From Macrostomum lignano (lineage: Eukaryota): 64,000 nucleotides of DNA. The DNA lies in the NCBI GenBank assembly GCA_002269645.1, contig NIVC01002024.1, positions 1-64,000 of the forward strand. Reading direction: 5' to 3'. This document shows positions 1 through 42,439 of this stretch, one piece after another. The position numbers were made by a program, and so were the translations under genes. The first letter of the stretch is position 1, and each line of letters begins with the position of its first letter. The notes below the pieces were generated by a model that searched no databases, was not told where the DNA came from, and was given only the letters and a program-made list of their open reading frames with translations.

Positions 1-853
1 GTACGAATATACTACTACAATATTAGTACTGCAATGAAAAATAATATAAATAAAATAAATATAAAATTAAGAAATTCTAAATAAAAGTACAACATTCAAA
101 ATCGACTATATTTCATTACAAATATAGTATTTGAAAGAGTGCCTAAATGTTATCTACGAAACTTTGAACGAGCTTTAACGACTAACGAAGCAAAAAGTAA
201 GTAAGGAATTTTAAAAAACAAGTATTGTATGAAGTTGATGTATAGGAATTCGCTATTCAATTTATTCCATAAGTGATAAAAATAAGTCTATAGGTATCAA
301 TCAGAAAATAACAAATTTGTATTAAATATGGTATTTTTATGGATTTTTTCGGTTTTTACGGACGAACTATATGACTAACAACAGAACTAGGCCTTTCATA
401 TCACCGATTCCAGAACCATAATCGGTTCGGATCTTCTGAGAAAAAGCAGTATAGGCCTAACGATTTAACTTTGATGAATGTTTTTTGACTGCCTTAACAG
501 CCTCACGTTGCACTTTTTTAGTTTTCTTCATGGCTATTGCAAATTTCAATAAATACAACTTTAAAGCACGTATATCCTTCCTTCTAGTTAAGGAGAGAAA
601 AAGTTATACTTTACAAATTGGATCTGGTTCTAGAACCAGAACAAGCAATATGAAAAGGCCAAACGACACAGTCTATACTTTCAGTACCAGAACCAGTACC
701 AGAACTAGTACCAAAAAATAAAACACAAAATACAAGTAAAAAACGAAAAATAACCAAGAAACATGTCTGAAATAGTACAAAATAAACTCTAGCAATTATT
801 ATATGCGTTAACACTGGTTTACCATATTTCGTTTAAGCGAATTCTACATACAT

Positions 854-2614
854 GTATGAAACATTCGCCGACACTTATTCAGACACTTCTACAGACACTT
901 TAGTTTCTGTCGTACGGTTAGGAACAAGCATTAAATTTGTCTAGGACACTTCCTAATTCATATTTAATGAAATAAAGCAGTCCATGCATAGTTTTAATTT
1001 TGAAATTTTGTTTTTGTGCACTCGTTCCAGACTTTCAAATTATGGCTTTTATCGCGTAGCGTGCACATGCATCGTGTACAACGATTAGCTGCAGTGTGCT
1101 AAATAGTTCACTGAGGTATTAAAAGCGTACAAGGAGACGAACCTCAAGTATTTGTACATTTTAGTTGAAGTTAAAAGTTCAAGCTTTTAGTGAATCATTG
1201 GAAAATAAAACTATCCATTTTAAATCGTGCAACATATTGTTTTGTCTCGGACATTTGTGACACTGTCACTTAGGGTTGCAAGGTTTTTAAAAAGAGAAAA
1301 CTGTTGCTTTTCCAATGCTGAAGTATTTGTGTTGTATGGATCAGGGTTTTTCGTCAAAATTTGGATGCATGTATACATCTAAACATGTATATGCAGATGG
1401 AAATATAATAATCAAGATGCCATATGTATATTTGCCAACATTTTCAGATTTTGTATAAAAATGATCAAGGTTGAGGATTACCCTATGGTATAACTGTTTT
1501 CTCCATTTTACTATTTCAAAGTGCCCACGTGAAGTTAGATTTAGCATGCCAGCCTTAAAAAATAAAAAAATCTACATAGTGTATAATTGTATACTCTTTT
1601 ATTTAAGGCTATATTTATTCCCAATATATTTGCTTAGATAAATCAAAAAGTATTTACTTTACTTGAAAAAAATAATGTTCACTACAAATATTTCAATGTA
1701 GAAACCAGGAAACATAAACCTATCAAGTCTTATATAGAAATGAAGGATAAAGATATGGATAGAATATAATAAAGCCATTGTGGGCATTAAATATAAAACA
1801 AAAGAATCACTTAAGGCAAAATTTGAAAAAGTGAATTTTTGGCATGCTCCAAGAAAAGAGGCTTATAATTTGAAATATTTTTGCTTTTGTTTGACAAAAA
1901 ATATGTATAGATTTATACTTTTAGGCAAGGTTTATTTTCTCTTAAAATTCTAATTGTAAATTTGCCAGTAAGCTTAAAAATTGTTGTAAGTTGAAGCTCA
2001 AATAAAATTAGTCTTAACTCCAATCTGACTTTCCAAAGTAAATCCCTAAATTATTTGTTACAATTGCTTTTAAAAACTTGCCATTTCATTCATTCATTAA
2101 TCAAAATTTTGTTCTAGAAACTGATACCTATAGAAGGTTTATAGTTTTTAAGAAATCTAGTAACTAGTGTCAGAGAAATATGTTTATATAGGTTTTATAT
2201 ATATCAACCTTATATATAAAAAAGGTTGCACACTGAGATTTAAATACAGCTTCTAACATGTGTGTCCAGAGGTGAGATTATGGCCAACTGCACACCAATG
2301 GCATACCAACTCCATACTGACATGCCAACTGTATACCAACTGTATACAAACACCATATCAACTCCATACCAATATGCCAACTGCATACCAACTCCATACC
2401 AACTGCATACCAACTCCATACCAACATGCCAACTGCATACCAACTACATACCAACTGTATGCCAACTGCATACCAACTCCATACCAACATGCCAACTGCA
2501 TACCAACTCCATACCAACTGCATGCCAACTGCATACCAACTACATACCAACTACATACCAACTATACCAACTGTATACCAACACCATACCAACTCCATAC
2601 CAACTCCATACCAA
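854..2614 (+). repeat. Left TIR: ~1.43 kb AT-rich arm plus inner tandem array (CCAACTGCATA/CCAACTCCATA-type units, ~2284-2614)
   Basis: Mirrors 9646-12185. The same 68-aa ORF appears at 1341-1547(-) and 11493-11699(+). I saw 2 substitutions (1217/11822 and 1568/11472) and one 1-bp indel (~1300), without checking every base. Confidence 0.95.
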
Positions 2615-2824
2615 GAATGTTAAATTGCGAGACTCGTAGGAACTTTTAGGTTCTCTTTTTGTACAACTCTTGGGATACTTCTGCCATGTTGCCATCTTTC
2701 CTGACTCTTTTGATGACTAAAATCGCACTCTTCCATATTCTAGGACCAGTTATTACAAGGCCCACCGGATGCTGTTCTGCCTTGTGTAGGTGCGGTCCTA
2801 CCATGCCCTTCTCTTTCTGTCATT

Positions 2825-3732
2825 GTGACGTTCAACAACAGCGATGAACTATCGATTCAGTCGGTTTGCCAGAGGCTTTGCGTTTGCTCACGTTCATTTA
2901 ATTTTAATCATTCTAATATCCGTGTGCGAGACGGATTTCGTAGGTGCGGACGTGATCGAGTGTCTGTTGTCCAATTAATAACCGATCCTAGCAAGGTTGC
3001 ATTTTTGCACGGTGTGTATGGTTGTGGAAACAAAGGCCACCGTGGTAATGGCATTGCTTGGCTGCAGCGTGTAACTAAGCCACATCTGACGCAGTCAGTT
3101 GTCCTACGTCGAGAGATTCCGGGTCACCATTTTCAAAGTTCAAAGCGACTGCGGAAGCAAGTTTTGCAGAGCTTTCGGCTCCTTATTTCTTCATGTGATG
3201 TGTCTGTTCTTCGTTCTCTGCTCGTTGTCTCGCGCGGCTTCAGTCAGCTACAATCGACTGTGCACCGTCGGCGTTTCATGCAGCGGCGATCACGCCCAAC
3301 TGATGAGGAGCAGCGGCAGCACGCGCTGCAAGACGAGCAGCGGCATTCGAGCTGGATGAACAGCGGCATCCGCAGATACAGGACGGCCAACGGCAACTCG
3401 CACTGCAGGAGGAGCCGCGGCAGCTCGAGCTGGATGAACAGCGGCATCCGCAGATACAGGACGGCCAACGGCAACTCGCACTGCAGGAGGAGCCGCGGCA
3501 GCTCGAGCTGGATGAACAGCGGCATCCGCAGATACAGGACGGCCAACGGCAACTCGCACTGCAGGAGGAGCCGCGGCAGCTCGAGCTGGCTGAACAGCGG
3601 CAGTCCCAACAGTACGAGTGTCCCGCTCTTGGACCACTAAAACCAATGCGTCGGAGATCGCAGAGGCCCCAGAGATCTTTAAGGTCGGTCCAACCAGCGA
3701 TGTCATTGCGCTCGCGAACGAGGCATGTGTAG
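2825..3732 (+). other. Possible second, frameshifted ORF of the element with a Q/E-rich 26-aa repeat
   Basis: The ORF 2825 frame reads TDEEQRQHALQDEQRH. From ~3347 an adjacent frame reads (ELDEQRHPQIQDGQRQLALQEEPRQL)x3 to a stop at 3730-3732. No family recognised. Confidence 0.3.
3347..3601 (+). repeat. 78-bp tandem repeat, ~3.3 copies
   Basis: TCGAGCTGG starts at 3347, 3425, 3503 and 3581. Confidence 0.95.
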
Positions 3733-5735
3733 TGTGAGCATCTTTTGCGTGTATTTTGTTAGGTAATTGATTGTATTAGTTTCTATATTGTTATTGAATT
3801 ATTATTTTGCTTTAGTTAGTCATGCGTTTTTGATGTACTTTTCTCTTGTTAGTTAGAATCTAAAATTGTAAACAGGTTAGAGTTAGACGCCAAATTTGTG
3901 ACTCAGCGGAGGGTTGAGTTTTCTGCGAACCCCAGCTTTGCGCGGTCAGCCAATCAGAACCGGCCTGGACCCTGGCACGCGGCAAGTTCCAGTTCTACCC
4001 GGCGCCGCGGGCACAGTGCAAATCGGCTTAAGCAAGCGGCCGGCCAGACGACCACCACCCGGCTTGAGGGGGGTTGTGAGGGTTTGACTCTGACTATATA
4101 TGAAAGTGTATTTGGCAATCGGATCTCGCCTTCTTTTCCCGGTTCTTGGTTTTGTCCAGCTTCCCGGCCGGTGGCCTGTTTCCCTTTGGTTCGCGCTTTG
4201 AGGCGTTTTGAATTCGTCACCCCCGGTCCATACCTTTGTTCCCCGCCCAACCGCTTTAGTCTTGTAGCGTAACGATTCGGCATCCTTGTCTGACGTCGTC
4301 GCTATCAAGCGCGGTTTAGATAGAGACTGTCGGATCTGATCAAGTACGCGGCCTCGACCCCGAGGGCCTCAGTGTCACACTGAAGGGCAGCGCTTATAGA
4401 ATTTAGTCAGTGCTCCGTTGAACAGTCGATTCGGCAGTGCTCTTGTTTGAGAGTAGGTTCTGGTTTAGGCCAGGGGTTAGGAGTCTTCTCCGTGGTCGTG
4501 TTCGGTTCCTCTTCCTCTTCTTCTCAGCTGAGATCTGCTTGCCAGTTGCGTAATCTAATTATTATTGTTAACCGTTATCGTCGTTTTGTCAACTCAGTTA
4601 TCTGCGCCGCTTTGAACTTGAATCTTGTAACTATTGAATGTGTCAAATTAAACCGTCAAGTCAATTGCTTATTAGCTATTCTTATAGGATTATCACTCCC
4701 TAAATCTTTCGGTTCGTGTTCCCTCGTGTTCTTTCTTTTCTTGTACTGTACCTGCGGCTATTGGAGAAAGACTGGTAGGACTCGCCGACCGGCGATAGGC
4801 AATTAGGGCCAATAGCTTTAAAATCTCCGAACGCTTCAAGTAGGTTTGTCTAGGGCCTAAATAATTGCTCACCGTGCATGCTATTTATCTAATTGCCTTT
4901 ATTTATCACACATGAGTAACATACTAGGATGATGCGTGACGGTATATCGGATGCGTGTTGAATAACAGTTTGTCCAGCTTCTTTTGCACGAAAATAAGAA
5001 CGCTGGTATTCGAGCATTAAACAAAGTCATACCTTCGTATAGCTTATTGGCTGATCTATTGTACCATGCAACAATTTTCATTGCAACAAAGTATGTAGTT
5101 GAATGACTTCAGCGTAGTAGTAACTATGAGACAAGTACCTTATGTGGTTTTTAATCTATACTTCCTTGAACGATTAATTGTAGTTTATACTTATATTTGA
5201 ACAGTTTTATTTCCTTTACTCGTATTAGTTGTCAGTCCTTGTGTTGAAATAAATTCTTTCGGATAAATAAAGCAAAGGAATGTTTCATGGCACGTATTTC
5301 GTTGATTGGAACAATTTTTTTGTGACATTTATTGGCCTATAAGTGATAAGTGACAGGTGTACAGGTTTCACAGGCCAAAAAAATTACGATTATACTCAAA
5401 TGGAGAGTATTTAGCTGCCAGAAAAGAGTATATAGTAGACACTACAAGTTTTAGAACTCACGTTGTCCAAACGGTTTACTAACGGCGTTTAGTCCCAGCT
5501 TTTAGCGCATACAGAAAAATAGAGAATTATAAAATGGCGGTAAACTATAAAATGCAAATCCGTACATGTATATATGTAGACCTTTTCAACACAGTTAAAA
5601 GTTTTTGTTATCAATACATTACACAGCACGATCATCAGTTATGAATTTATACTTTCAACGGCATAATACCATTACAAACACGAATAAACTCAAGAAAATA
5701 AGTAAACCGTCCACATTATGTTAATAACACGGAGA

Positions 5736-6817
5736 TCACCAACACGTTAGCCGTAAAAAAAGAGCGCAGCAGTTTCGCTTCACGTCATTGAATGCCGCTG
5801 ACAAAGATACTTTTCGTACAGTCAAATCACTGACACAGTAGCTAGTGCGGCCACAGAATACGTATGCAATATAGTGACCACTATTCACGCGACTACCAAT
5901 GTGAACGATGAATGCACGAAGCTTGTAGCTTCTGCCACTCAAAGTAAGCTTCATCTCGATGGGTACAACTTTAGTGTTCTTCTCGAATAGTACAGTTTGT
6001 CCCTTTCTGCGCTTGACAGAGACTCGGCTAATTCCCATGCATATGTGCTCCGACGTTGTTGCAAGTGTTTGTGCATAGCTGCACCCCCGACGTCGCAAGT
6101 CGGACAACGGATGTCGGTGTGGTCTTGAGTAGAAAACAGTGACTGTCTAATGAGTGCCGGGAAATCAAGCGAGTCGTCGTGATCAGGATTGATAAACGTA
6201 GAATAGTTGCCGTGTCTCTAGGTAGCAGTCGTGTCACTTTGAAACAGGCGGAACAACTCAAAGTTGTAGAAATCTACGAAATAAAAAAGATGGATAGGAA
6301 CAGTACTCATGGTGCAACTGTGAAGACCAACACACAGTGGAAGCGCGATTGAAAGGTATTCTTTGCCTTCCCATAAGTCAGCAAAGTATATACTGTCTTC
6401 GAAGGTAACTTACAAATAAATTTAGATTCAGGATGCAGGCTTAAATCACTTTACTAAAACGCATTTAAATAGTCATAAACTTAATAAACCGTTCACCCTT
6501 ACCTCGCAGCTAAATCGCGGTTTGAGCTCAGAAAGAAACAGCATTCCGGTCAGAAACTCTAAGGCACAGTTTTGTGCCATAGGATCCATATGAAATGCTT
6601 TACTGCACCACTGAAACGCGGCTGAATGCAGCAACAGAACGTCTTTGCCTGTCATTAGGCAGTTAAGGAACAGCGCAAGTGGTGAATCTGCATCACACGA
6701 TAGTGCGCTCGTTAATGTTGCAACCAAGCATTGACTGGCGGCATTGAAAGCACAATACGTGCCCGTCGGATTCGGTGGCCCCTCTGGCGACCGTGGCGAT
6801 AGTGCAGGAAATGACAC
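5736..6817 (-). pseudogene. Ubiquitin-specific protease (USP/peptidase C19) domain carried inside the transposon; spliced and frameshifted
   Basis: Cys box GPPNPTGTYCAFNAASQCL, then QNCALEFL. A GT-AG intron (donor GAG|GTAAG at 6502, acceptor TTTCGTAG|ATT near 6274) joins RFSCE to ISTTLSCSAC. A second CxxC (DIRCPTC) follows in a shifted frame. His box YKLRAFIVHIGSRVNSGHYIAYV, then VSDLTV. Confidence 0.8.
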
Positions 6818-7239
6818 TGCAGTGTCGGCGCGTCCTAATAAAATTGGCGGTTAGGAACGAATTTACCATCAAAATGTCCCAGTGAACAGCCCAGTCACAT
6901 CCATTTAACAACAAAAAATGCGCCTCGACGTAAGCAAAAGAAACGAAACTTAAAAGTACAAATACTTATGGAAAGCAACATGTTGAATGCTAATTCATGG
7001 AAATTAGTAAAACTTAAAAGGGCATAATCGGTGACACGAAAAGCAAAAAATGATGGAATCATAAACTTTAGATCTCTAATCAGAGAACAATCACGTAACA
7101 GAAACGTGCATCATACGGAACATGTTGGATTGTGCAATATAAATACCTGTGCCAGTCGAGACGGAGGAGGCCTACAAAGAGAGTTGATTGATAAGGTTGC
7201 ACCTTACCCACAAGTTGCTGAGACATGGCACATACATTA

Positions 7240-9575
7240 CTACGACAGATCTAGTGGGAGACGCAAATTGTGGCGGAGTGAGTGTACGGCGTATACACAA
7301 TACGTAAACCAATACAAGGGTTGACTGAAGGTATTTCTAAACTGAAAAAATGCAATTTCATCACTCACAATTTGCTCATCTGGTAGGCTCTGACAGGTGG
7401 TATTCTGTGCTGTTGGTGCAGGTGAAATGCCCGAGCGAGACCCACTTGCAGCAGGCGCAGCTAGAGTACAGGTCGTGCGTGCAATAGCAGGCCGAACCTG
7501 GACAATGACGGGCTGGCTGCCCGAGCGAGACCCACTTGCAGCAGGCGCAGCTAGAGTACAGGTCGTGGGTGCAACGGCTGGCGGAATTGATAATGCCGAT
7601 TGAATGAAGCTGGTTCTTTGTCTTTTTGAGGCTCTTGACCTTTTCCAGGGATCTCCAGGTGGGTTTAACGGAGCATCAAAGCCACATTTGCGTCCTCTAG
7701 CACGCTTCGGGGGGCGAATTGGATGTTGCTCGTGCTGCAACCGCTTCAGTTGCAGTTTTACGGTTGTTAGTTGCGCACGGACAAATCTTGGTAACCTGAG
7801 CCGAGAACTTGGAGAAGGCAGTGCTTCGCTTTTGCCCCAGCTGAACCATGATTCAACAGCGGCGTTGGTCACGTGTGCGCTACGATTTCCTCCAAACACT
7901 GCCACACTCCAAAGAGGAAACAGTGACATCCACTTTCGCAATACAACCTGAACAGCCTGAGGGTAGAAAAGATTGTTCAGCACGCCATTGCCATCGCTTG
8001 CTGTCACTTCGCTTGTCAAATCGTTGAAGTACTTCGCAAAAGGTGATGAGGCTCGTAGTCCAGTCTCCAATTCAGCCAATGCGACGTCTTCTTGCACTGC
8101 ATTTGAGACATTAGCAGAATCTTCAGCCACTTGGTTTTCATCAGGAATCTCCAACGAACTGAAGTCGAACCTACCATGTAGAATTTGTAAAGCCTTCAAA
8201 GTGGCAGGACCTACTCGCCTGGAGGTAAACACCTCGACCATTGCCTTCCAAACAGCTTGGGCGCAACGCAAAGTTTTCGACGTCACTAATAGTGCAAAAG
8301 AGAGCATGAACTCGCGATAAGTAACCTTATCGATTTTATTGGTGACTTCAAAGTCCTGGCAACAGCGCGCAGCAAATGCGAGCTACAGATAAACACAACA
8401 GGAGATTCAGGTGGCTTCAGATCAGCACTCCGAAGTCGATTGTACTGTACACGCAGGTAGTCTGTAACACAGGTCGTACATGCGGCTCGGAGAATACCAT
8501 GAATGAAAACCCAGCTAAAGTCAGACACGTAGATTTGCGGACCTTTCTTGGGTAGTTCCCACAGTCCTATGTTGCAGTGACGAGCGAAATCTGCTAAAAA
8601 ATGCATTAGCCAACTGGACACATTTTCCGAGCGCGTGACCTCCATGATGCTTTCTGATACAGCTGTTCTCTTTATATCCGGGGTTGCAACAACAGCACTG
8701 CACAGAAGTACAGTGCTCGGCACGTTCTGGGTCTGTCGCACAATTCCGCCGGTGGAGTCTAAGTGGAGAGGAGCAAGCTGATTGCCTTTCAGCACGTCGC
8801 GAAGCAAATCCAACTGCATGGAGGTATGGAGAATCACACCAACTGGTGCAACGTCAATCTTTTGGATATAGCCGCTAATGACTCCATCCTCGTTTATAGT
8901 CAACTTCCAGTCTTTCATTTGGAGTCTTAAATCTCTTATGTCGTCTGGAGACTTGTCGTCGGCAGCTTTTGTCCGACTAACAGTTGTACGGACAGCAGAT
9001 AGAGAGCATGCTTCGCTACCAAACAGCTCGATTGCTTTCACATAGATCTGCGTTGGCTTGGCAGCAGCGTTGTTGGCCTGAGATAAAACAAAGTTACGGC
9101 ACTCTTGTGAACCTCGTTGCCACAGATAGCGATAAGAGGAACAACTTGATGGAACATCATTCCTCGAGTGCTCTGAGATTCTTCGTAGCGTCAGTGTAGA
9201 GGACTGCCCATCAGTCGGCGCCTTGTTTAAGGTGACGACGAATGCCATACTGCAACCAGAGCCTTCGGCACAGACTAGGCGCATCCAAAGAAAACTGCAG
9301 TCCTTCCGATGGCGCTTAAATGCACGCAGTCTAACCTTATTAACTGAGAACTGACAATACTCACCATGCTGTCTTAACAGTAGATAAATGACTTCATCAA
9401 ACCAAGAAGGCTTAAGTTTACAAGTTCTTGTATCAAAGTGATTCACGAAGAGATTAGTTGATATGCATGATTCCACAAAAACACCTCCAGCAGAAAAAAC
9501 TTGTGCACCAGCAGCACCTGACTGGTCACCGCTAATGGCTTCAGAAGTGTCGTACACACTTTTCTTCGCTGCCAT
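7240..9575 (-). pseudogene. MULE/NOF-like DDE transposase split by one frameshift (~8345-8355)
   Basis: ORF 8286-9575 carries LHLDSTG (D1), YVSDFSW (D2) and CSSH (CxxH signature). ORF 7240-8307 continues in another frame (FEVTNKIDKVTYREFMLSFALL...) and carries TNAAVESWF (catalytic E). Confidence 0.85.
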
Positions 9576-9645
9576 GCAAAGAAGCCTGAAACATGAAACA
9601 ATGGTATGAATTTGCCATGTTTTCGTTTAGTGTGGCATAATATAA

Positions 9646-12185
9646 GTTGGCATGTTGGTATGTAGTTGGTATGTTGGTATGGAGTTGGTATGCAGTTGGC
9701 ATGCAGTTGGTATGGAGTTGGTATGCAGTTGGCATGCAGTTGGTATGGAGTTGGTATGCAGTTGGCATGCAGTTGGTATGGAGTTGGTATGCAGTTGGCA
9801 TGTTGGTATGGAGTTGGTATGCAGTTGGCATATTGGTATGGAGTTGGTATGTTGGTATGGAGTTGGTATGCAGTTGGCATACAGTTGGTATGGAGTTGGT
9901 ATACAGTTGGCATACAGTTGGTATGCAGTTGGCATGTTGGTATGGAGTTGGTATGCAGTTGGCATGCAGTTGGTATATAGTTGGTATAGAGTTGGTATGC
10001 AGTTGGTATGCAGTTGGCATGCAGTTGGTATATAGTTGGTATAGAGTTGGTATGCAGTTGGTATGCAGTTGGTATGGAGTTGGTATGGTGTTGGTATGCA
10101 GTTGGCATGTTGGTATGTAGTTGGTATGCAGTTGGCATACAGTTGGTATGGAGTTGGTATGCAGTTAGCATGTTGGTATGGAGTTGGTATGCAGTTGGCA
10201 TGTTGGTATGGAGTTGGTATGCAGTTGGCATACAGTTGGTATGGTGTTGGTATACAGTTGGCATGTTGGAATATAGTTGGTATGGTCGTATGGAGTTGGT
10301 ATGCAGTTGGCATGTTGGAATATAGTTGGTATGGAGTTGGTATGCAGTTGGTATGCAGTTGGCATGTTGGCATATAGTTGGTATAGAGTTGGTATGCAGT
10401 TGGCATGCAGTTGGTATGTAGTTGGTATGCAGTTGGCATGCAGTTGGTATGTAGTTGGTATGCAGTTGGTATGCAGTTGGTATGCAGTTGGCATGTTGGT
10501 ATATAGTTGGTATAGAGTTGGTATGCAGTTGGTATGCAGTTGGCATGCAGTTGGTATGTAGTTGGTATGCAGTTGGCATGTTGGTATGGAGTTGGTATGC
10601 AGTTGGTATGGAGTTGGTATGCAGTTGGTATGGAGTTGGTATGCAGTTGGCATATTGGTATGGAGTTGATATGGTGTTTGTATACAGTTGGTATACAGTT
10701 GGTATACAGTTGGCATGTCAGTATGGAGTTGGTATGCCATTGGTGTGCAGTTGGCCATAATCTCACCTCTGGACACACATGTTAGAAGCTGTATTTAAAT
10801 CTCAGTGTGCAACCTTTTTTATATATAAGGTTGATATATATAAAACCTATATAAACATATTTCTCTGACACTAGTTACTAGATTTCTTAAAAACTATAAA
10901 CCTTCTATAGGTATCAGTTTCTAGAACAAAATTTTGATTAATGAATGAATGAAATGGCAAGTTTTTAAAAGCAATTGTAACAAATAATTTAGGGATTTAC
11001 TTTGGAAAGTCAGATTGGAGTTAAGACTAATTTTATTTGAGCTTCAACTTACAACAATTTTTAAGCTTACTGGCAAATTTACAATTAGAATTTTAAGAGA
11101 AAATAAACCTTGCCTAAAAGTATAAATCTATACATATTTTTTGTCAAACAAAAGCAAAAATATTTCAAATTATAAGCCTCTTTTCTTGGAGCATGCCAAA
11201 AATTCACTTTTTTCAAATTTTGCCTTAAGTGATTCTTTTGTTTTATATTTAATGCCCACAATGGCTTTATTATATTCTATCCATATCTTTATCCTTCATT
11301 TCTATATAAGACTTGATAGGTTTATGTTTCCTGGTTTCTACATTGAAATATTTGTAGTGAACATTATTTTTTTCAAGTAAAGTAAATACTTTTTGATTTA
11401 TCTAAGCAAATATATTGGGAATATAATATAGCCTTAAATAAAAGAGTATACAATTATACACTATGTAGATTCTTTTATTTTTTAAGGCTGGCATGCTAAA
11501 TCTAACTTCACGTGGGCACTTTGAAATAGTAAAATGGAGAAAACAGTTATACCATAGGGTAATCCTCAACCTTGATCATTTTTATACAAAATCTGAAAAT
11601 GTTGGCAAATATACATATGGCATCTTGATTATTATATTTCCATCTGCATATACATGTTTAGATGTATACATGCATCCAAATTTTGACGAAAAACCCTGAT
11701 CCATACAACACAAATACTTCAGCATTGGAAAAGCAACAGTTTCTCTTTTTAAAAACCTTGCAACCCTAAGTGACAGTGTCACAAATGTCCGAGACAAAAC
11801 AATATGTTGCACGATTTAAAACGGATAGTTTTATTTTCCAATGATTCACTAAAAGCTTGAACTTTTAACTTCAACTAAAATGTACAAATACTTGAGGTTC
11901 GTCTCCTTGTACGCTTTTAATACCTCAGTGAACTATTTAGCACACTGCAGCTAATCGTTGTACACGATGCATGTGCACGCTACGCGATAAAAGCCATAAT
12001 TTGAAAGTCTGGAACGAGTGCACAAAAACAAAATTTCAAAATTAAAACTATGCATGGACTGCTTTATTTCATTAAATATGAATTAGGAAGTGTCCTAGAC
12101 AAATTTAATGCTTGTTCCTAACCGTACGACAGAAACTAAAGTGTCTGTAGAAGTGTCTGAATAAGTGTCGGCGAATGTTTCATAC
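9646..12185 (-). repeat. Right TIR, with an expanded inner tandem array (~9646-10755, ~1.1 kb)
   Basis: Reverse complement of the left arm. The array of TATGCAGTTGG/TATGGAGTTGG units is about 3x longer than the left one. Confidence 0.95.
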
Positions 12186-12759
12186 GTCCAAAAATACGAT
12201 TCTCGATGTAATGCCTATTTAAAAACTAAAACACCGTATGAAGAAACTGGGAGCCCTCTAATCAAAACTTAAAACAAACAAATAAAACCAAAAAAACCTA
12301 TCAATAAAGGCTAAAATAAAAATATACCAAAAAAGTGCATGTATAGGCTCTATAGGTTCAATTCTTGTAAATTTTAACGATATTATCACTATAGTGTACT
12401 TTGGCTTTGGTGAGTACGAAGCTGAAAGCTGAGATCTGGAAGGAAACGCGCATTATCTGGAAGGAATTATCTGCAGGGCATTATCTGGAAGAAGAAGGCA
12501 TTATCTGGAAGGAAACATTATCAATCTAGAAGCCTGCAAGACGTCAAAGCTCCATCTGTTCCATACTCGAACTTACAGACTCCCAAGTTCCCCCTGCTTA
12601 GTACATTAATATGCAGAAAGTAGGCCTACTTTAGTGTACTTTGGCAAAAACCATTGTGAGTACAAAGCTCACAATGCGATTTAAAATAGGTAATTAAGCA
12701 TTATTCTGTCAATGAAAAATATTGAGTATAAGGATTGCTCATAATATTTGGCGATTATT

Positions 12760-16442: not shown

Positions 16443-17709
16443 ATGGAGACCCGTCACAGGAAGGCGGCCTCGCCACAGCGCCGCAGGGACACCAGCAGGT
16501 CCCGGAGTCGAATCTCGCGGCCATCGCTGCCAGCCTCCGCTGCCGCCAGCTCCTCACCGGCTGGCAGGGGCGGTCGGCGCCACGGCTTTGCTGGTGGGCG
16601 GAACAGCCTGGCTGGCGGGGTGCCGAGACACCTGCGATATGATCCAAGCATTGAGCTGCGGCAGGTGCGTGCGCTTGCTGGGGGTATTGGGAGCATCCCA
16701 GGTATCCCAGGTACTGGGCAGCCGCACCCAATCCCAGGTATCCCAGGTACTGAGCAGCCGCACCCCATCCCAGGTATCCCAGGTACTGAGCAGCCGCACC
16801 CCATCCCAGGTATCCCAGGTACTGAGCAGCCGCACCCCATCCCAGGTATCACAGGTACTCAGCAGCTGCACCCCATCCCAGGTACTGAGCAGCCGCACCC
16901 CATCCTCAGGTGAAGGAGTGCATTCCATCCCAGGTATCCCAGGTACTGAGCAGCCGCAACCCATCCCCAGGTGAATGAGTGCATTCCATCCCAGGTATCC
17001 CAGGTACTGAGCAGCCGCACCCCATCCCCAGGTGAAGGAGCGCATCCCCATGTACACGGACTGGGCCAAGCAGGACGAGCTGTTCGAGACGACGCGACTC
17101 GACAGGCAGCGCTACGAGGCCAAGCAGGCGCAGAAGCGGCTGTTGCAGAGCCTCAACAGCAGCGTGGGAGGCAACTTGAACTCATCGCTGAACTCAAACG
17201 CCTCAGACGGCAGCTGCTTCGAGATGGAGGACGATGAGGCGGTTCTGCTGCGTCGGCAGCGCGACATCGACAAGTCGAAGAACCTGACGGCGTACGCGAA
17301 CTACGTGAAGTCGGTGCCGAAGCCTCTGCGGGAGAAGGGCGACCCGCGGACTCCGAACAAGTTCGTGCGAATGTCCCGCAGAGCCTGGGACGGCTGCGTC
17401 AAGCAGTGGAAGCTGCAGCTTCATCGCTGGGATGACGCAGCCAGCAGCAGCGCTGGCATCTCGCCGCGGTCCTCGCCATCGTCCACGCCACCGCCACTGC
17501 CTGCGAAGCTTCCGACTGACGATGAAGACGGCGACTCTCGGACCCTCACCGCTGCACCTGCCGCCACCTCCAGCGTCCAGCCCGACGCTCTGCATAGCGG
17601 CTTGACCAGCGACGTTCAGGGACTCGCTGTGGGAGCCGCCTGTCCCAGACTCACCCGCAAGAGGTCCTCCGCCCTCACCGACTCGCCCTCCAAGAAGCTC
17701 AAGCACTGA
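16443..17709 (+). CDS. SLBP: Histone RNA stem-loop binding protein (exons 16443-16664 and 17032-17709; 5' end uncertain)
   Basis: SLBP RNA-binding domain EDDEAVLLRRQRDIDKSKNLTAYANY...PRTPNKFVRMSRRAWDGCVKQWKLQLHRWD. Phase-0 intron with CAG|GTGCGT and CCCCAG|GTGAAG. Confidence 0.92.
16690..17031 (+). repeat. Intronic 36-bp minisatellite grading into a 61-bp repeat that includes the splice acceptor
   Basis: Unit CCCATCCCAGGTATCCCAGGTACTGAGCAGCCGCAC. AG|GTGAA starts recur at 16910, 16971 and 17032. Confidence 0.9.
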
Positions 17710-18838
17710 GTTGAATGTGCTGCTCAAATACTGAGTTGAATGTGTTGCTCAAATATTGAGTTGAATGTGTTGCTCAAATATTGAGTTGAATGTACTGCTC
17801 AAATATTGAGGTAAATGTGCTGCTCAAATATTGAGTTGAATGTGCTGCTCAAATATTGAGTTGAATGTGCTGCTCAAATATTGAGTTGAATGTGTTGCTC
17901 AAATACTGAGTTGAATGTGCTGCTCAAATACTGAGTTGAATGTGTTGCTCAAATATTGAGTTGAATGTGTTGCTCAAATATTGAGTTGAATGTACTGCTC
18001 AAATATTGAGGTAAATGTGCTGCTCAAATATTGAGTTGAATGTGTTGCTCAAATATTGAGTTGAATGTGTTGCTCAAATATTGAGTTGAATGTGCTGCTC
18101 AAATATTGAGTTGAATGTGCTGCTCAAATATTGAGTTGAATGTGTTGCTCAAATACTGAGTTGAATGTGCTACTCAAATATTGAGGTAAATGTGCTGCTC
18201 AAATATTGAGTTGAATGTGCTGCTCAAATATTGAGTTGTGTGCTGCTCAAATATTGAGTTGAATGTGCTGCTCAAATATTGAGTTGAATGTGTTGCTCAA
18301 ATATTGAGTTGTGTGCTGCTCAAATATTGAGTTGAATGTGTTGCTCAAATATTGAGTTGTGTGCTGCTCAAATATTGAGTTGTGTGCTGCTCAAATATTG
18401 AGTTGAATGTGTTGCTCAAATATTGAGTTGAATGTGCTGCTTAAATACTGAGTTGTGTGCTGCTCAGTGATGCTCAAATACTGAGTTGTGTGCTGCTCAA
18501 ATATTGAGTTGTGTGCTGCTCAAATATTGAGTTGTGTGCTGCTCAAATACTGAGTTGTGTGCTGCTCAGTGATGCTCAAATACTGAGTTGTGTGCTGCTG
18601 AGTGCTGCTCAAATACTGAGTTGTGTGCTGTTGAGTGCTGCTCAAATACTGAGTTGTGTGCTGTTGAGTGATGCTCAAATACTGAGTTGTGTGCTGCTGA
18701 GTGCTGCTCAAATACTGAGTTGTGTGCTGTTGAGTGATGCTCAAATACTGAGTTGTGTGCTGCTGAGTGCTGCTCAAATACTGAGTTGTGTGCTGCTGAG
18801 TGCTGCTCAAATACTGAGTTGTGTGCTGCTCAGTACTG
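17708..18838 (+). repeat. Minisatellite downstream of SLBP (25-bp, then 23-bp, then 33-bp units)
   Basis: TGAGTTGAATGTGCTGCTCAAATAT. The first unit overlaps the SLBP stop codon. Confidence 0.95.
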
Positions 18839-19383
18839 CTCAGGCCAGCACCGTTTTCTGTGTGGGTAATGATGGGATACTCTTTAGGGTTGGGGTCAGT
18901 GATATTCATTTTTTGCTTTCTGTAATCGGTACTTATTGAAATTTTACGTCAGTTTTTTTCACCAGTGGTGCTGTAATCAAGCTGCATCTTATTAATTGTA
19001 ACATTGGCTTTGCTGCATTATGCTAAATACTCTTTTTCTCTATTTTTGTCACAATATGCTGTAGTGCAATAAGTTTATAATATAATAATGTAATTAGAAT
19101 GTTTTTCTTAATTAATACAACTTTAAAACAAGTAGTACTTTTTCATAAAGTTTTTCGTTTAATAATGTTAACAAAATAGTTCCGAAAAGACCAAGTAAAA
19201 AGTGACAAGTGCACTTTTAATTCGTTAATGTTTTGGGTTTGAATTTTATTCGTAAGCTTCTTTTAATTTGTTTTTTATTTTTTTAAATAGGCTTTCACTA
19301 GCTTCAGTTTAAGCAATTAAGCATTCCTTTCTTATGAGCTTGCTCATGGCAATATGACTTGTGAAAGGTGAAGCAGAGTTCGG

Positions 19384-20162
19384 AGTTAATGACCCTGGCT
19401 ATTAGAATGTCAAATTAGAGTTTATGGCCCCAGCTATTAGAAAGTCAAATTAGAGTTTATGGCCCCAGCTATTAGAATGTCAACTTAGAGTTTATGGCCC
19501 CAGCTATTAGAATGTCAACTTAGAGTTTATGGCCCCAGCTATTAGAATGTCAAATTAGAGTTTATGGCCCTAGCTATTAGAAGGTCAAATTAGAGTTTAT
19601 GGCCTTAGCTATTAGAATGTCAAATTAGAGTTTATGGCCCCAGCTATTAGAAAGTCAAATTAGAGTTTATGGCCCTATCTATTAGAAGGTCAAATTAGAG
19701 TTTATGGCCACAGCTATTAGAATTTCAAATTAGAGTTTATGGCCCCGGGTATAAGAATGTCATATTAGAGTCTATGACCTTAGCTATTAGAAAGTCAAAT
19801 TAGAGTTTATGGCCCTAGCTATTAGAATGTCAAATTAGAGTTTATGGCCCTAGCTATTAGAAGGTCAAATTAGAGTTTATGGCCCTAGCTATTAGAATGT
19901 CAAATTAGAGTTTATGGCCACAGCTATTAGAATGTCAAATTAGAGTTTATGGCCTTAGCTATTAGAAAGTCAAATTAGAGTTTATGGCCCCAGCTATTAG
20001 AAATTCAAATTAGAGTTTATGACCCTGGCTATTAGAATGTCAAATTAGAGTTTATGGCCCAGCTATTAGAATGTCAAATTAGAGTTTATGGCTACGGGTA
20101 TAAGAATGTCAAATTAGAGTCTATGACCTTAGCTATTAAAATGTCAAATTAGAGTTTATGAC
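19384..20162 (+). repeat. 35-bp minisatellite
   Basis: CAGCTATTAGAATGTCAAATTAGAGTTTATGGCCC tandem units. Confidence 0.95.
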
Positions 20163-20313
20163 AATGATTTTCAGAATCGTAAGAGTTTATATTAGTTAAA
20201 AATGACATGGTCTAAATGGTTTTGCAATTTTCTTATGATTAATTAAGCGAGAGAAATTGTGTGCGATAAAAGATTGGCAAACACCAAGAGGCGCTAGCTT
20301 AGTTGCTAAGCAA

Positions 20314-27956: not shown

Positions 27957-29286
27957 TTAGTTGGCAAGGTCCTCGCAGGCGGGCACCCGGAATAGCAGCC
28001 GGTGCTCCCCTGTGCTCAGCGTGAGTTGTCCTGGCGGCCCAGGCAAAGCCAGCCGGGCCACCTCCCGCAGCAGGACCGGCCTGAACTCGTCCAGCGATCC
28101 GAGGCCGCGCTCTCTGAGGTGGCCCTCCGGCAGGCTGAGGCTCACCGAGTCGGCGTCGTGCAAGCGGCGACCGCGTCGCTCCGACAGCTCGTCAGCTCGC
28201 TGCATCAGTCGGGGCAGCAGCGGGTTCAGCCGCTTGCGGAGCACTTCACGAAGCGCGCCCAACTCGCCCTGAAGTGTGCAGGTACGCTTGGCTAGATTAG
28301 CAATCCATTCATAAAATTTATACTTGATTGGCTAGATTAGCAATCCATTCATAAAATTCATACTTGATTGGCTAGATTAGCAATCCATTAACGAAAATTC
28401 ATACTTGATTGGCTAGATTAGCAAGCCATTCATAAAATCTATACTTGATTGGCTAGATTAGCAATCCATTCATAAAATTCATACTTGATTGGCTAGATTA
28501 GCAATCCATTCATAAAATTCATACTTGATTGGCTAGATTAGCAATCCATTAACGAAAATTCATACTTGATTAGCTAGATTAGCAAGCCATTCATAAAATC
28601 TATACTTGATTGGCTAGATTAGCAATCCATTCATAAAATTCATACTTGATTGGCTAGATTAGCAAGCCATTCATAAAATCTATACTTGATTGGCTAGATT
28701 AGCAAGCCATTCATAAAATCTATACTTGATTGGCTAGATTAGCAATCCAATTTATAATTGCTATAATCGGGCTGCTCACCAGCAGCACGAGTTGCCTCTG
28801 CGGATCGGCGCCCTCCAAGAACACTGCCTGCTCAGACTCGCCAACCTCCAGAAATGCCACCTGCTGTTGCTGCTGCTGCAGGCTGGATTGCTGCTTCCGC
28901 CTGGGCAGATCAGCGGATGCTGAGGCGCCCTCTCGATCGCGCTGCAGAGTGCGCAGTTGAGCAGCCAGCTCAGGCAGCTGCAGGTACTCGGCCTCGGCCT
29001 CGAGCCGCTCCCAGTCGTCAAATCGTTGCAAATCGCAGGGCGGTAGGAAGCGACCGCCGTGCCTGAGAAAGTCCAGCGCCATCCCAAACACAGCCGGATT
29101 CCGGTCGAGAAACGGCCGGCCAGTCGAATCAACGCAGCCGGCCAATTCTCGGCCGGACAGTAGGCGGGCTAATCGACAATTTGGAAACTTGTCGGCGATG
29201 TTGGGCGATACGGCTACGGTTTTGCCGCCGATGTTGAACTCGACGGCTTTCTGCTGCTGCTGATGCTGATGATTGTTTTGCTTCAT
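27957..29286 (-). CDS. KCTD-like BTB/POZ (T1-type) domain protein, 2 exons (29286-28780 and 28268-27957), ~273 aa
   Basis: VEFNIGGKTVAVSPNIADKFPNCRLARLL...FLDRNPAVFGMALDFLRHG...LEAEAEYLQLPEL. Phase-0 intron with CTG|GTGAGC and ACTTCAG|GGC. Confidence 0.88.
28289..28749. repeat. Intronic 40-bp minisatellite
   Basis: GGCTAGATTAGCAATCCATTCATAAAATTCATACTTGATT fills the KCTD intron. Confidence 0.95.
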
Positions 29287-38418: not shown

Positions 38419-38749
38419 CTCAGCGAGACCTCAATTACGCAGGCAAATATCGATTTAGTTAAATCCTACCTTTCAATGACTAGCGGCAGATTGTACTCGT
38501 AATCAACTACTTAACAGTAGGAAGGTCAAGCCATTTTCCGCCCTTCGAACTACCAAAGTGAAAGGGATCCTCCATCCCTTGACAAATTTTCGTTGCTGCG
38601 CCGGAACGAAGCGATGCAGGCACACGAAATTCAAGAACATGGGCTAAATTTTTGTCTAGCACCTTCACAAACAAGAATCAAGTCGCCAGCCCTCCGGACC
38701 ATCGAGATATTCAACGATTCTGTCAGAAAGAATCGATTTGGGATTGTAG

Positions 38750-41872: not shown

Positions 41873-42439
<567 letters not shown>

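What the first reader, a model, noticed from the sequence alone, without database searches (positions are those of the whole stretch)
5736..9575. Foldback/Mutator transposon carrying a USP-type (C19) deubiquitinase behind its transposase
Seen: on the same strand, directly downstream of the DDE transposase and inside the TIRs, lies a USP domain. It retains the oxyanion Asn and catalytic Cys (N-P-T-G-T-Y-C), the QxxxxEFL motif, two CxxC pairs, the GHY His box and the downstream Asp, and it has its own GT-AG intron. Known: Mutator-like and some other DNA transposons commonly carry Ulp1/C48 SUMO proteases, and some carry OTU domains. I do not recall a C19 USP cargo being characterised. Inference: the element may encode a transposase-USP fusion or a co-expressed deubiquitinase. 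It could protect the transposase from degradation or strip repressive ubiquitin marks (e.g. H2AK119ub) as an anti-silencing device.
Basis: partly seen in the sequence, partly recalled or inferred. Interest (0 to 1): 0.85.

Follow-up and report, generated by a model that had tools for sequence, protein, structure and literature searches.

The report
Mutator-like flatworm transposon carrying USP protease
This is a decayed copy of a multi-copy, long-inverted-repeat Mutator-like DNA transposon of the flatworm Macrostomum lignano whose transposase gene is followed by a ubiquitin-specific protease (USP) module, at the place where its relatives carry a SUMO/ubiquitin-like protease (Ulp1), which suggests that this transposon group needs some ubiquitin-type deconjugating enzyme.

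Summary
Window 852-12187 is one copy of an 10-13.5 kb transposon of Macrostomum lignano. It has about 1.4 kb near-perfect terminal inverted repeats plus 11-nt minisatellite arrays. Six other copies lie at different sites with 8-9 bp target duplications.

On the minus strand it encodes a DDE transposase with a conserved D..D..CxxH..E core. The fold model matches the IS256-family transposase ISCth4 best and has a WRKY-like N-terminal domain, so it is Mutator/Rehavkus-like.

Two downstream exons encode a divergent but complete USP/C19 domain (Pfam UCH E=1.5e-9 in intact copies). The window copy is dead: one frameshift in the transposase and three in the USP. Copies L001 and L004 are intact.

The USP is not a recent host capture, because no similar host USP was found. 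At least eight distant transposase relatives carry a USP Cys box in the same ORF, and two loci show further USP exons. The closest relative family (40% identity) and more than 20 others carry Ulp1/C48 (often with PHD) at that position, and two carry OTU.

In-frame expression in M. lignano is unresolved. The RNA-seq-based gene model splices into the USP exon out of frame.

Protease cargo in transposons is known, so this is a new variant of a known kind.

The parts
852..12187 (-). Whole transposon copy. Termini are A(T/C)GTATGAAACATTCGCCG...CGGCGAATGTTTCATACGT. This copy has no target-site duplication.
   Evidence: BLASTN to six GenBank copies ends at 849-854 and 12185-12190. Termini are shared with L001-L006. 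The flanks share no k-mer of 6 nt or more.
852..2283 (.). Left terminal inverted-repeat arm, unique part.
   Evidence: Inverted pairs 854-1299/11740-12185 (100%), 1285-1615/11425-11755 (98%), 1616-1830/11209-11423 (100%) and 1818-2372/10666-11220 (98%).
2284..2614 (.). Left subterminal minisatellite: 11-nt unit CCAACTGCATA, about 31 copies.
   Evidence: TRF.
9654..10754 (.). Right subterminal minisatellite: 11-nt unit GTTGGTATGCA, about 104 copies, inverted relative to the left array.
   Evidence: TRF; inverted-repeat pairs.
10755..12187 (.). Right terminal inverted-repeat arm, unique part.
8340..9575 (-). Transposase, 5' part up to the frameshift. It holds a WRKY-like C..C...H..H region (about 9278-9156), catalytic D (8759-8757), D (8522-8520) and CxxH (8387-8376).
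   Evidence: ORF 8286-9575. It is 96% identical to PAA77430.1. Conserved columns D271, D350, C395 and H398. Coordinates. Fold.
8339..8340 (-). Site of a 1-nt deletion that frameshifts the transposase in this copy. The intact copies read CCAGATAAAATCG; the window reads CCAATAAAATCG.
7240..8339 (-). Transposase, 3' part. It holds TNAAVESWF with the catalytic E at 7854-7852, a basic linker, two 90-nt (30-aa) repeats at about 7606-7428, and a stop at 7242-7240.
   Evidence: ORF 7240-8307; N569/E573/K580 conserved; repeat copy number varies between copies; coordinates.
6835..7368 (-). Intron joining the transposase ORF to USP exon A in the RNA-seq-based GenBank models. The donor is ATT|GTGAGT (phase 0) and the acceptor is ttattag|GACGCG. 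Alternative phase-1 donors CAA|GTGGGT lie at 7535 and 7445, and A|GTGATG at 7364.
   Evidence: The P0001 sequence reads ...PDEQI/DAPTLQCHF.... Donor scan. The in-frame model P0006 uses the repeat donor.
6503..6834 (-). USP exon A: Cys box NPTGTYCAFNAASQCL (catalytic Cys codon 6754-6752) and QNCALEFL. It is intact in the window.
   Evidence: P0006 covers it at 99% identity.
6274..6502 (-). GT-AG intron inside the USP (gtaagg...tttcgtag). It contains a window-specific 8-nt insertion at 6372-6379.
5736..6273 (-). USP exon C: CSAC and CPTC zinc-ribbon pairs, His box (His codon 5876-5874) and Asp (5828-5826). It is broken in the window by 1-nt deletions at about 6187 and about 6083 and by an extra T at 5761.
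   Evidence: Pfam UCH. Comparison with six copies. Coordinates. The exon is intact in L001, L004, L005 and L006.
3724..4910 (.). 1187-nt insert present only in this copy (nested insertion or local rearrangement). It is not part of the family consensus.
2825..3640 (+). Repeat-rich ORF on the opposite strand (78-nt repeats at 3314-3602). It is present in all copies and called as a gene in L003, L004 and L006. Its function is unknown and it may be non-coding.
   Evidence: No Pfam hit.

Best explanation
**What it is (shown).** The window holds a recently inactivated copy of an autonomous cut-and-paste DNA transposon family of Macrostomum lignano.
- The transposase belongs to a large, Pfam-unmodelled, mainly animal branch of Mutator-like (IS256/MULE-type, Rehavkus-like) DDE transposases.
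- It has a WRKY-like DNA-binding domain and long TIRs with subterminal minisatellites. It makes 8-9 bp target duplications.
- In this branch the 3' end of the transposase gene carries an interchangeable papain-fold ubiquitin/ubiquitin-like deconjugating protease. Most lineages have Ulp1/C48, often with a PHD finger and sometimes a YqaJ nuclease. A few have OTU. One sub-group, and independently or divergently this M. lignano family, has USP/C19.
- The USP has been carried and kept open in the element lineage. It is not a fresh host-gene capture.

**How it most likely works (inferred).**
- The protease is made as a C-terminal extension of the transposase. In M. lignano this needs a phase-1 donor inside the 30-aa repeats rather than the strong phase-0 donor, which yields transposase alone.
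- It removes ubiquitin or a ubiquitin-like modifier from the transposase itself or from chromatin or repair factors at the element.
- The effect would be to stabilise the transposase or to counter ubiquitin/SUMO-dependent silencing or repair signalling.
- The particular protease class matters less than having one.
For: **Multi-copy mobile element.**
- Six GenBank copies have different flanks and 8-9 bp TSDs. They are 97.7-97.9% identical to the window over 2.6 kb.
- L001 and L004 have an open transposase ORF and both USP exons open.

**Transposase class.**
- 629 relatives at E<=1e-3 share invariant or near-invariant D, D, CxxH, N..E..K.
- The AF2 model has mean pLDDT 75.8. Its best PDB matches are ISCth4 (IS256 family) at probability 1.0, E=7e-5, and the AtWRKY18 DNA-binding domain at probability 0.97.

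**USP identity.**
- Pfam UCH scores above the cut-off.
- All catalytic motifs are present.
- The only PDB hits are USPs.

**Not a recent capture.** A 5.8-billion-protein search finds only the element's own fragment.

**Conserved architecture.**
- Eight distant relatives end with G[LIM]xNxxNxCW[LI]NS in the transposase ORF.
- The concatenated USP pieces of L009 hit UCH at E=3.9e-16 over model positions 2-254.
- L008 has three USP exons.

**Protease swap.**
- The closest family is P0007, at 40% identity. Its locus has C48 His and Cys boxes plus a PHD-like finger downstream and no USP.
- Pfam finds C48 in 14 and OTU in 2 of 105 relatives scanned. A family-specific HMM finds C48 in 21 of the 154 proteins searched.

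**Expression.** GenBank models derive from RNA-seq-guided assembly (PMC5730564). The phase-1 donors CAA|GTGGGT score the same as the annotated donor. An independent gene model, P0006, uses one of them to give an in-frame fusion.
Against: **Expression in frame is not shown.**
- The RNA-seq-based CDS of five annotated copies splices into USP exon A out of frame and stops 40 codons later.
- With that splice the USP frame has TGA at the junction.
- There is no ATG upstream of the catalytic Cys in exon A.

**The USP may not be active.**
- It is very divergent. The Pfam alignment starts at model position 71 and does not cover the Cys box.
- The Cys box has one extra residue between the oxyanion Asn and Cys. 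The usual Asp of QxDAxEF is Cys.
- The single-sequence structure model failed at pLDDT 34.5.

**No measure of selection.** Copies within the family are more than 99.5% identical, so selection on the USP cannot be measured.

**Classification is incomplete.**
- No Pfam MULE or Transposase_mut model hits the transposase.
- The tree that separates the M. lignano family from the USP-bearing clade is a crude NJ tree without support values.

No biochemical or genetic evidence exists for any function.
Confidence: 0.75

Rival explanations
1. The USP module was once part of the element but is now a non-functional relic in the M. lignano family. It is transcribed and spliced but never translated in frame. 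Its open exons in some copies reflect only the youth of the copies.
For: - The annotated RNA-seq-based CDS is out of frame with exon A.
- There is no upstream ATG.
- Two of six GenBank copies and the window copy carry frameshifts in exon C.
- The Cys box is atypical and the sequence is very divergent.
Against: - The master sequence keeps both exons open, both splice sites and every catalytic motif, despite divergence beyond BLAST range from all other USPs.
- The transposase lineage is only 40% identical to its nearest relative, which implies long maintenance.
- Equally good phase-1 donors exist in each repeat unit.
- The sister family shows the same out-of-frame annotation for its C48 exons. 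That points to a shared expression trick or an annotation limit rather than decay.
Confidence: 0.15
2. The USP is expressed as a separate protein and not as a transposase fusion. One route is spliced-leader trans-splicing, because the M. lignano leader ends in AUG. Another is internal initiation.
For: - About 30% of M. lignano genes are SL trans-spliced and the SL ends in ATG (PMC8629364).
- For the sister family, SL-ATG joined to the acceptor cccacag|ATTATTAAT gives exactly the C48 frame.
- A phase-0 AG (CCAGAG|GGGCTACCGAAT) upstream of the USP Cys box would give M-GLPNPTGTYC.
Against: - On the main exon A acceptor (ttattag|GACGCG), SL-ATG gives the wrong frame.
- The phase-0 AG has a poor pyrimidine tract.
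- Distant relatives have the USP Cys box in the transposase ORF itself.
- No SL read evidence is available here.
Confidence: 0.08
3. This is a one-off Pack-MULE-style capture of a host USP gene fragment that is decaying neutrally.
For: Mutator-like elements are known to capture host fragments (own knowledge; also PMC6446971 abstract). The window copy's USP is frameshifted.
Against: - The USP is in all seven copies at different loci.
- No similar host protein exists in a 5.8-billion-protein search.
- It is a complete domain with conserved intron and splice sites.
- USP is found at the same position in at least eight distant relatives and two further loci.
Confidence: 0.02
4. The USP-like motifs are a chance resemblance and there is no protease domain.
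For: There is no significant single-sequence PDB hit and the structure model is poor.
Against: - Pfam UCH scores above the curated cut-off three ways.
- All 18 sub-threshold PDB hits are USPs aligned on the His box.
- The ordered motifs Cys box, QxxAxEF, CxxC, CxxC, GHY, D and LFY are all present.
Confidence: 0.01

Closest known systems
Rehavkus / Mutator-like elements (MULE superfamily in the broad sense)
   Same: - 9-bp-class TSDs (8-9 bp here).
- Long TIRs and a minisatellite next to the termini.
- A PHD finger in many relatives.
- A DDE core with CxxH.
- An IS256-like fold and a WRKY-type N-terminal domain (Rehavkus features from PMC6446971).
   Different: - No Pfam MULE or Transposase_mut hit.
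- About 220 residues lie between the second D and E, because of a helical insertion.
- This family has no PHD finger and carries a USP.
- Rehavkus is described from arthropods and annelids only. No Repbase reference sequence could be compared here.
Ulp1(C48)-carrying DDE transposons: Mutator elements of hydra, lancelet and plants (KI-MULEs), and Ginger1 with Ulp1/OTU/PHD
   Same: A C-terminal papain-fold ubiquitin/Ubl protease is attached to or follows the transposase, often with PHD (PMC2836005). More than 20 relatives of this transposase, including the nearest family, have exactly that.
   Different: Here the protease is C19/USP rather than C48 or OTU. Ginger1 transposases are integrase-like and unrelated in fold family.
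Helitron-like elements carrying OTU, VTD or UCH domains
   Same: These are transposon-borne deubiquitinase domains. Different DUB classes substitute for each other in related elements (PMC9741609). The Pfam UCH domain is enriched in two Helentron (HLE2) subgroups (PMC11417382).
   Different: They are rolling-circle RepHel elements, not DDE cut-and-paste elements. There is no evidence that the USPs are related to this one.
Trichomonas vaginalis XP_001314237.1 (transposase_11 + Peptidase C19)
   Same: A DDE transposase is joined to a C19 ubiquitin hydrolase. It is mentioned in one sentence in PMC2836005.
   Different: It has an IS4/IS5-type transposase (Pfam PF01609), comes from a protist and is uncharacterised. 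It was not compared here.
Cellular USPs (weak best hits USP12/46, USP25/28, USP30/35)
   Same: Cys box, QxxAxEF, two CxxC pairs, 'Y.L.A.VVH.G....GHY' His box, Asp and terminal LFY.
   Different: - No hit below E=0.045 to any solved USP.
- The core is compact, about 270 aa.
- There is one extra residue between the oxyanion Asn and the catalytic Cys.
- It is encoded inside a transposon.
Drosophila Foldback (FB) and Galileo long-TIR elements
   Same: Very long inverted arms built partly of short tandem repeats (own knowledge).
   Different: Here the arms have a 1.4 kb unique terminal part plus an inner array. Galileo is a P-superfamily element. The FB transposase was not compared.

Membership tests
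USP / peptidase C19 (Pfam UCH PF00443) | Significant match to the family profile above the curated cut-off. | tested here: met
   Scores are 30.2 bits (window ORF), 36.5 bits (corrected window peptide) and 38.3 bits (intact copy L001), against a cut-off of 23.9 bits.
USP / peptidase C19 (Pfam UCH PF00443) | Cys box with the catalytic Cys and oxyanion Asn. | tested here: inconclusive
   NPTGTYCAFNAASQCL is present by inspection. The Pfam alignment starts at model position 71, and there is one extra residue between Asn and Cys.
USP / peptidase C19 (Pfam UCH PF00443) | His box (GHY) and downstream catalytic Asp/Asn. | tested here: met
   YKLRAAIVHIGSRVNSGHYIAYV...VSD lies within the Pfam-aligned region and aligns to the USP12 His box.
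USP / peptidase C19 (Pfam UCH PF00443) | Deubiquitinating activity. | not testable with these tools
   Needs Ub-AMC, Ub-PA or chain-cleavage assays.
Mutator-like (MULE/IS256-type, including Rehavkus) transposons | RNase H-fold DDE core with a C/DxxH motif, related to IS256. | tested here: met
   D, D, CxxH and E are conserved in 101 relatives. Foldseek's top five hits are ISCth4 transposase at probability 0.98-1.0.
Mutator-like (MULE/IS256-type, including Rehavkus) transposons | Match to Pfam MULE, Transposase_mut or DBD_Tnp_Mut models. | tested here: not met
   No such hit for the window ORFs, P0001 or 105 relatives.
Mutator-like (MULE/IS256-type, including Rehavkus) transposons | 8-10 bp target-site duplication. 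| tested here: met
   TSDs of 8 or 9 bp in six copies. The window copy itself has none.
Mutator-like (MULE/IS256-type, including Rehavkus) transposons | WRKY/GCM1-type zinc-finger DNA-binding domain at the N-terminus. | tested here: inconclusive
   Foldseek hit to the AtWRKY18 DNA-binding domain at probability 0.97, target-normalised TM-score (TMt) 0.62, E=0.19. Conserved C..C...H in relatives.
Rehavkus group | [quoted passage not shown] | tested here: inconclusive
   Minisatellites are present in both arms. PHD is absent from this family but present in 14 of 105 relatives and in the sister family. No Rehavkus reference sequence was available.
Pack-MULE / host-fragment capture | Cargo nearly identical to a host gene, usually a fragment, in one or few copies. 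| tested here: not met
   No host homologue was found. The domain is complete and present in all copies and in distant relatives.
hAT, P, Kolobok, KDZ/Zisupton superfamilies (considered because of CxxH, the helical insertion and Ulp1) | Profile or structural match to these transposases. | tested here: not met
   There is no Pfam hit to hAT, P or KDZ models. No Hermes, P-element or RAG1 structure is among the 50 Foldseek hits listed. A profile search of PDB found nothing.

The most novel reading that the evidence does not exclude
A whole invertebrate branch of Mutator-like transposases is natively fused to catalytically active USP deubiquitinases. USP, Ulp1 and OTU modules have replaced one another repeatedly at the same position. 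Production of the protease-bearing isoform is gated by alternative 5' splice-site choice or by trans-splicing. If so, removing ubiquitin or SUMO is a general, selectable requirement or counter-defence of this transposon superfamily.
Probability: 0.3. Interest if true: 0.75.

Novelty: new variant of a known kind. Interest (0 to 1): 0.58.

Why it matters
Transposon-borne Ulp1, OTU and VTD proteases have been catalogued for 15-20 years, but no role for them in transposition has been established.

This case shows three different ubiquitin/Ubl protease classes occupying the same slot behind homologous transposases. The swap is visible even between two families within one genome. That argues the selected property is deconjugation itself.

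It also offers a tractable system. M. lignano is transgenic-capable. It has intact copies (L001, L004), transcribed elements and a natural USP-versus-C48 comparison. The question 'what do transposon DUBs do?' therefore becomes directly testable.

The work also flags a large transposase branch that has no Pfam model. The GenBank annotation excluded transcripts overlapping repeat annotations, yet these copies are annotated as ordinary hypothetical genes.

Tried and rejected
- Pfam on the individual window ORFs found nothing for the transposase or for the Cys-box ORF alone.
- Rfam on the window found nothing.
- phmmer of the USP against PDB at E<=0.01 found nothing. At E<=10 it found only weak USP hits.
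- Single-sequence AlphaFold of the USP gave pLDDT 34.5, which is unusable, so no fold search was made.
- A word-indexed search with the 101-sequence profile returned only the query. Low-complexity repeats probably filled the candidate list, and the search was wasted.
- A profile search of PDB with the transposase alignment gave no real hit.
- tBLASTN of the M. lignano USP against the sister-family locus L007 found no USP.
- Pfam on raw three-frame translations of L007 gave no C48 hit. The C48 assignment there rests on tBLASTN to C48-bearing relatives.
- -1 frameshifting at the splice junction was considered and set aside. With the annotated splice the USP frame reads TGA at the junction.
- KDZ/Zisupton, hAT, P and Kolobok were considered for the transposase and not supported.
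- The one alignment-A3 member with a Pfam UCH hit at E=8.9e-6 could not be identified by motif searches. Eight Cys-box bearers were found instead.
- dN/dS across copies was not attempted. The six GenBank copies differ from one another at only a handful of the 74 variable alignment columns over 2.6 kb, so there are too few substitutions.


Full report
**1. What is in the window**

The window is eukaryotic and very repeat-rich. Around the finding there is a pair of long inverted arms. Segments 854-1299/11740-12185, 1285-1615/11425-11755, 1616-1830/11209-11423 and 1818-2372/10666-11220 are 98-100% complementary. Inside them lie inverted arrays of an 11-nt unit, at 2284-2614 (about 31 copies) and 9654-10754 (about 104 copies).

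On the minus strand between the arms lie four ORFs:
- 8286-9575 (429 aa);
- 7240-8307 (355 aa);
- 6473-6817, which holds NPTGTYCAFNAASQCL and QNCALEFL;
- 5736-6107, which holds GHYIAYV.

Pfam UCH (PF00443) hits the last ORF alone at E=4.5e-7, 30.2 bits against a 23.9-bit cut-off.

**2. Organism, copies and boundaries**

The joined transposase ORFs are 96% identical over their full length to 'hypothetical protein BOX15_Mlig004567g1' of Macrostomum lignano (P0001). P0001 is one of a cluster of five annotated proteins.

I fetched the six encoding loci from GCA_002269645.1 (L001-L006).
- All share the element from termini ACGTATGAAACATTCGCCG... to ...CGGCGAATGTTTCATACGT.
- All have different flanks.
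- They carry 8- or 9-bp target-site duplications: GTACACTGT, TTATTAAT, CTTCAGAA, GCGACTTT, GTAAAACAA and TTATTTTC.
- Their lengths are 10.4-13.5 kb.

In the window the element is 852-12187. This copy has no TSD and carries a private 1187-nt insert at 3724-4910.

Over the 2.6 kb that includes the USP, the six GenBank copies are nearly identical to each other and 97.7-97.9% identical to the window.

**3. Gene model and state of the copies**

Comparison with the intact copies gives this model in window coordinates.
- The transposase runs 9575->7240, with a 1-nt deletion at about 8339/8340 (CCAGATAAA in L001 against CCAATAAA in the window).
- An intron runs 7368-6835.
- USP exon A is 6834-6503.
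- A GT-AG intron runs 6502-6274 (gtaagg...tttcgtag).
- USP exon C is 6273-5736.

Relative to L001, the window lacks a T at about 6187 and a G at about 6083, and it has an extra T at 5761. The window's USP therefore has three frame breaks and its transposase has one, so this copy is dead.

The state of the GenBank copies is as follows.
- L001 and L004 have an open transposase ORF (868 and 988 aa) and both USP exons open.
- L002 and L003 lack the G in exon C.
- L006 has a truncated transposase.
- L005 is defective.

A 90-nt (30-aa) repeat near the transposase C-terminus varies in copy number between copies.

**4. The USP**

The spliced product of L001 is 286 aa and has, in order:
- the Cys box;
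- QNCALEFL;
- CSAC;
- CPTC;
- YKLRAAIVHIGSRVNSGHYIAYV;
- VSD;
- a terminal ALFYG.

It hits Pfam UCH at E=1.5e-9, 38.3 bits, model positions 71-254. phmmer against PDB finds nothing at E<=0.01. At E<=10 all 18 hits are USPs (USP12/46, 25/28, 30, 35), aligned on the His box.

A search of 5.8 billion proteins finds only P0006, a fragment of the same element. No M. lignano host USP resembles it. It is therefore a genuine but highly divergent C19 domain and not a recent host capture. A single-sequence structure prediction failed at pLDDT 34.5.

**5. The transposase**

Pfam has no model for it. An exhaustive HMMER search of 1.84 billion representatives finds 629 relatives at E<=1e-3 and 200 at E<=1e-10.

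Their alignment shows an invariant or near-invariant D271 (DATG), D350 (VTDFS), C395xxH398, N569 and E573 (TNxxVExWF), and K580. There are also N-terminal C..C...H positions.

An AlphaFold model built with that alignment has mean pLDDT 75.8, with the core above 90.
- Foldseek against PDB gives the IS256-family ISCth4 transposase as the top five hits (probability 0.98-1.0, E=7e-5 to 1e-3).
- It also gives the AtWRKY18 DNA-binding domain at probability 0.97.

IS256 is the prokaryotic counterpart of eukaryotic Mutator transposases, and WRKY-type fingers are their usual DNA-binding domain (own knowledge).

The other features also fit the 'Rehavkus' group of Mutator-like elements as described in PMC6446971: 8-9 bp TSDs, long TIRs, minisatellites next to the termini, and PHD fingers in relatives. 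I could not compare a Rehavkus reference sequence. The Pfam MULE models do not hit, so I call it Mutator-like/Rehavkus-like rather than a proven member.

**6. What relatives carry at the same position**

Pfam scans of 105 relatives gave:

| Domain | Members with a hit |
|---|---|
| Peptidase_C48 (Ulp1) | 14 |
| PHD | 14 |
| YqaJ | 5 |
| OTU | 2 |
| UCH | 1 |

A family-specific HMM raises C48 to 21 of the 154 proteins searched.

Motif searches then showed that eight relatives end with a canonical USP Cys box, G[LIM]xNxxNxCW[LI]N[SA]xxQ. They are P0018, P0024, P0041, P0053, P0068, P0070, P0107 and P0147. Seven of them share 25-31% identity with P0001. The box lies in the same ORF as the transposase, about 100 residues after the TNxxVExWF motif. 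The gene calls stop shortly afterwards. For the four that Pfam detects there (P0041, P0053, P0070, P0107), it aligns those residues to UCH model positions 1-23.

In locus L009 (the P0053/P0162 family) the remaining USP exons lie downstream. The concatenated pieces hit UCH at E=3.9e-16, 59.8 bits, over model positions 2-254 of 254. L008 (the P0070 family) shows three USP exons before the contig ends. A transposase-USP fusion is therefore a conserved architecture in part of this superfamily.

The nearest relative of the window's transposase is P0007 (Mlig026520, 40% identity, also M. lignano). Its locus has no USP. Downstream in the same transcription unit it has:
- a C48 His box, NQHFMLLFVDLERHNVAVLDPL, at L007 10567-10632;
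- a Cys box, QQDGNSCGVLV, at 11514-11546;
- a PHD-like finger at 11916-11957.

All three were found by tBLASTN to C48-bearing relatives.

In a crude NJ tree, seven USP-bearing relatives fall in one large clade that has no C48 bearers. P0001 groups with P0007 elsewhere. The M. lignano USP is therefore either a second acquisition or a misplaced long branch. Either way, one protease class replaced another between two families within one genome. The His boxes HIGSRVNSGH (M. lignano) and HIGGQVNSGH (L009) are similar, but the rest is too divergent to decide.

**7. Expression**

GenBank models for this assembly come from RNA-seq-guided transcript assembly plus TransDecoder. Transcripts overlapping annotated repeats were removed (PMC5730564). 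So the element is transcribed and spliced, and it was not recognised as a repeat.

The annotated CDS uses donor ATT|GTGAGT (phase 0) and acceptor ttattag|GACGCG. That puts exon A out of frame, giving the tail DAPTLQCHF...LQH and then a stop. The USP frame needs a phase-1 donor.
- CAA|GTGGGT occurs in every 90-nt repeat unit and scores the same on a simple consensus count as the annotated donor.
- An independent gene model, P0006 (UniProt A0A1I8HZW9), uses it to give ...TLAAPAA-RRADTAVS... in frame.
- A weaker A|GTGATG donor lies 4 nt after the annotated one.

Exon A has no ATG before the catalytic Cys.

The sister family's annotated CDS (P0156) also enters its C48 exon out of frame. The M. lignano spliced leader ends in ATG (PMC8629364). 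Trans-splicing onto that C48 acceptor would start the C48 frame. On the main USP acceptor it would not.

Whether the USP is made as a fusion, made separately, or not made at all is therefore unresolved here.

**8. Mechanism (inference)**

The most economical reading has three parts.
- The element encodes a Mutator-like transposase.
- Through alternative splice-donor choice, it also encodes a transposase-USP isoform.
- The protease removes ubiquitin or a ubiquitin-like modifier from the transposase or from chromatin or repair factors at the element.

The interchange of C48, OTU and USP at one position argues that deconjugation as such is the selected activity. The same argument was made for VTD/OTU in Helitrons and herpesviruses (PMC9741609). 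A role for the ubiquitin pathway in transposition was proposed for Ulp1/OTU in Ginger1 and Mutator elements (PMC2836005). No activity or target is shown.

**9. Novelty**

Protease cargo in transposons is well known.
- Ulp1 occurs in Mutator elements of hydra, lancelet and plants.
- Ulp1, OTU and PHD occur in Ginger1 (PMC2836005).
- OTU and VTD occur in Helitrons (PMC9741609).

C19 itself has been noted twice in the literature I could search. One is a T. vaginalis transposase_11+C19 protein, mentioned in a single sentence. The other is UCH enrichment in two Helentron subgroups.

I found no description of USP modules in Mutator-like elements, nor of a C48/USP swap between sister families. The library is limited to open-access papers, and Repbase reports are not searchable.

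I therefore rate this a new variant of a known kind, of moderate interest. It is more valuable as an experimental entry point than as a surprise.

Noticed in passing
window 35836-36984 (+), 42539-43726 (+), 45497-46618 (-): Three paralogous ORFs (373-395 aa) have Pfam Methyltransf_21 (FkbM-type methyltransferase) hits. Segments 42814-43634 and 45604-46424 form a 99% inverted pair, and 35994-36878 is an 88-93% copy. This looks like a recent local gene-family expansion.
   Followed up: partly
window 17032-17709 (+) and 28720-29286 (-): Two ORFs match host-gene domains: the histone stem-loop-binding protein RNA-binding domain (E=2e-24) and a BTB_2 domain (E=9e-11). They are probably exons of host genes.
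   Followed up: partly
window 3724-4910: A 1187-nt segment lies between GTTACTCATG and CCTCGTTCG. It is present only in the window copy of the element and absent from six GenBank copies. It may be a nested insertion with a CATG duplication. It has no match elsewhere in the window or the fetched loci.
   Followed up: partly
window 2825-3640 (+); L003 15019-16152, L004 15292-16425, L006 14930-16063 (-): An ORF on the strand opposite to the transposase lies inside the element. It is rich in 78-nt repeats with variable copy number and is called as a gene in three GenBank copies. It has no Pfam hit. It could be a second element gene or just a repeat-borne ORF.
   Followed up: partly
L007 8091-8117 / 10297-10341 (sister family Mlig026520/Mlig032215): The RNA-seq-based CDS (P0156) joins CG|GTAAGT (phase 2) to cccacag|ATTATTAAT, which needs phase 0. 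It therefore enters the C48 exon out of frame, just as in the USP family. Because the M. lignano spliced leader ends in ATG, trans-splicing at that acceptor would start the C48 frame exactly.
   Followed up: partly
window 852 and 12187 flanks: The window copy has no target-site duplication, whereas all six GenBank copies do. This hints at recombination between copies or a flank rearrangement.
   Followed up: partly
window 7428-7606 and homologous positions in L001-L006: A 90-nt in-frame repeat (30 aa, APTTCTLAAPAASGSRSGSQPVIVQVRPAIA) near the transposase C-terminus varies from about 2 to about 8 copies between element copies. Each unit carries the phase-1 splice donor that would put the USP in frame.
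   Followed up: partly
window 17600-18360, 19240-20170, 23680-25900, 31060-35450, 37460-38600, 41750-42500, 48660-49400, 49790-50620: There are many long tandem arrays with periods of 8-46 nt. The 31-35.5 kb block is a 33-nt array in repeated blocks. This agrees with the reported 15% tandem-repeat content of the M. lignano genome.
   Followed up: no
L009 13432-13896: A called gene with a Macro-domain hit lies about 3.5 kb downstream of the USP exons in the metagenome contig that carries the P0162 transposase-USP element. I did not check whether it belongs to the element.
   Followed up: no
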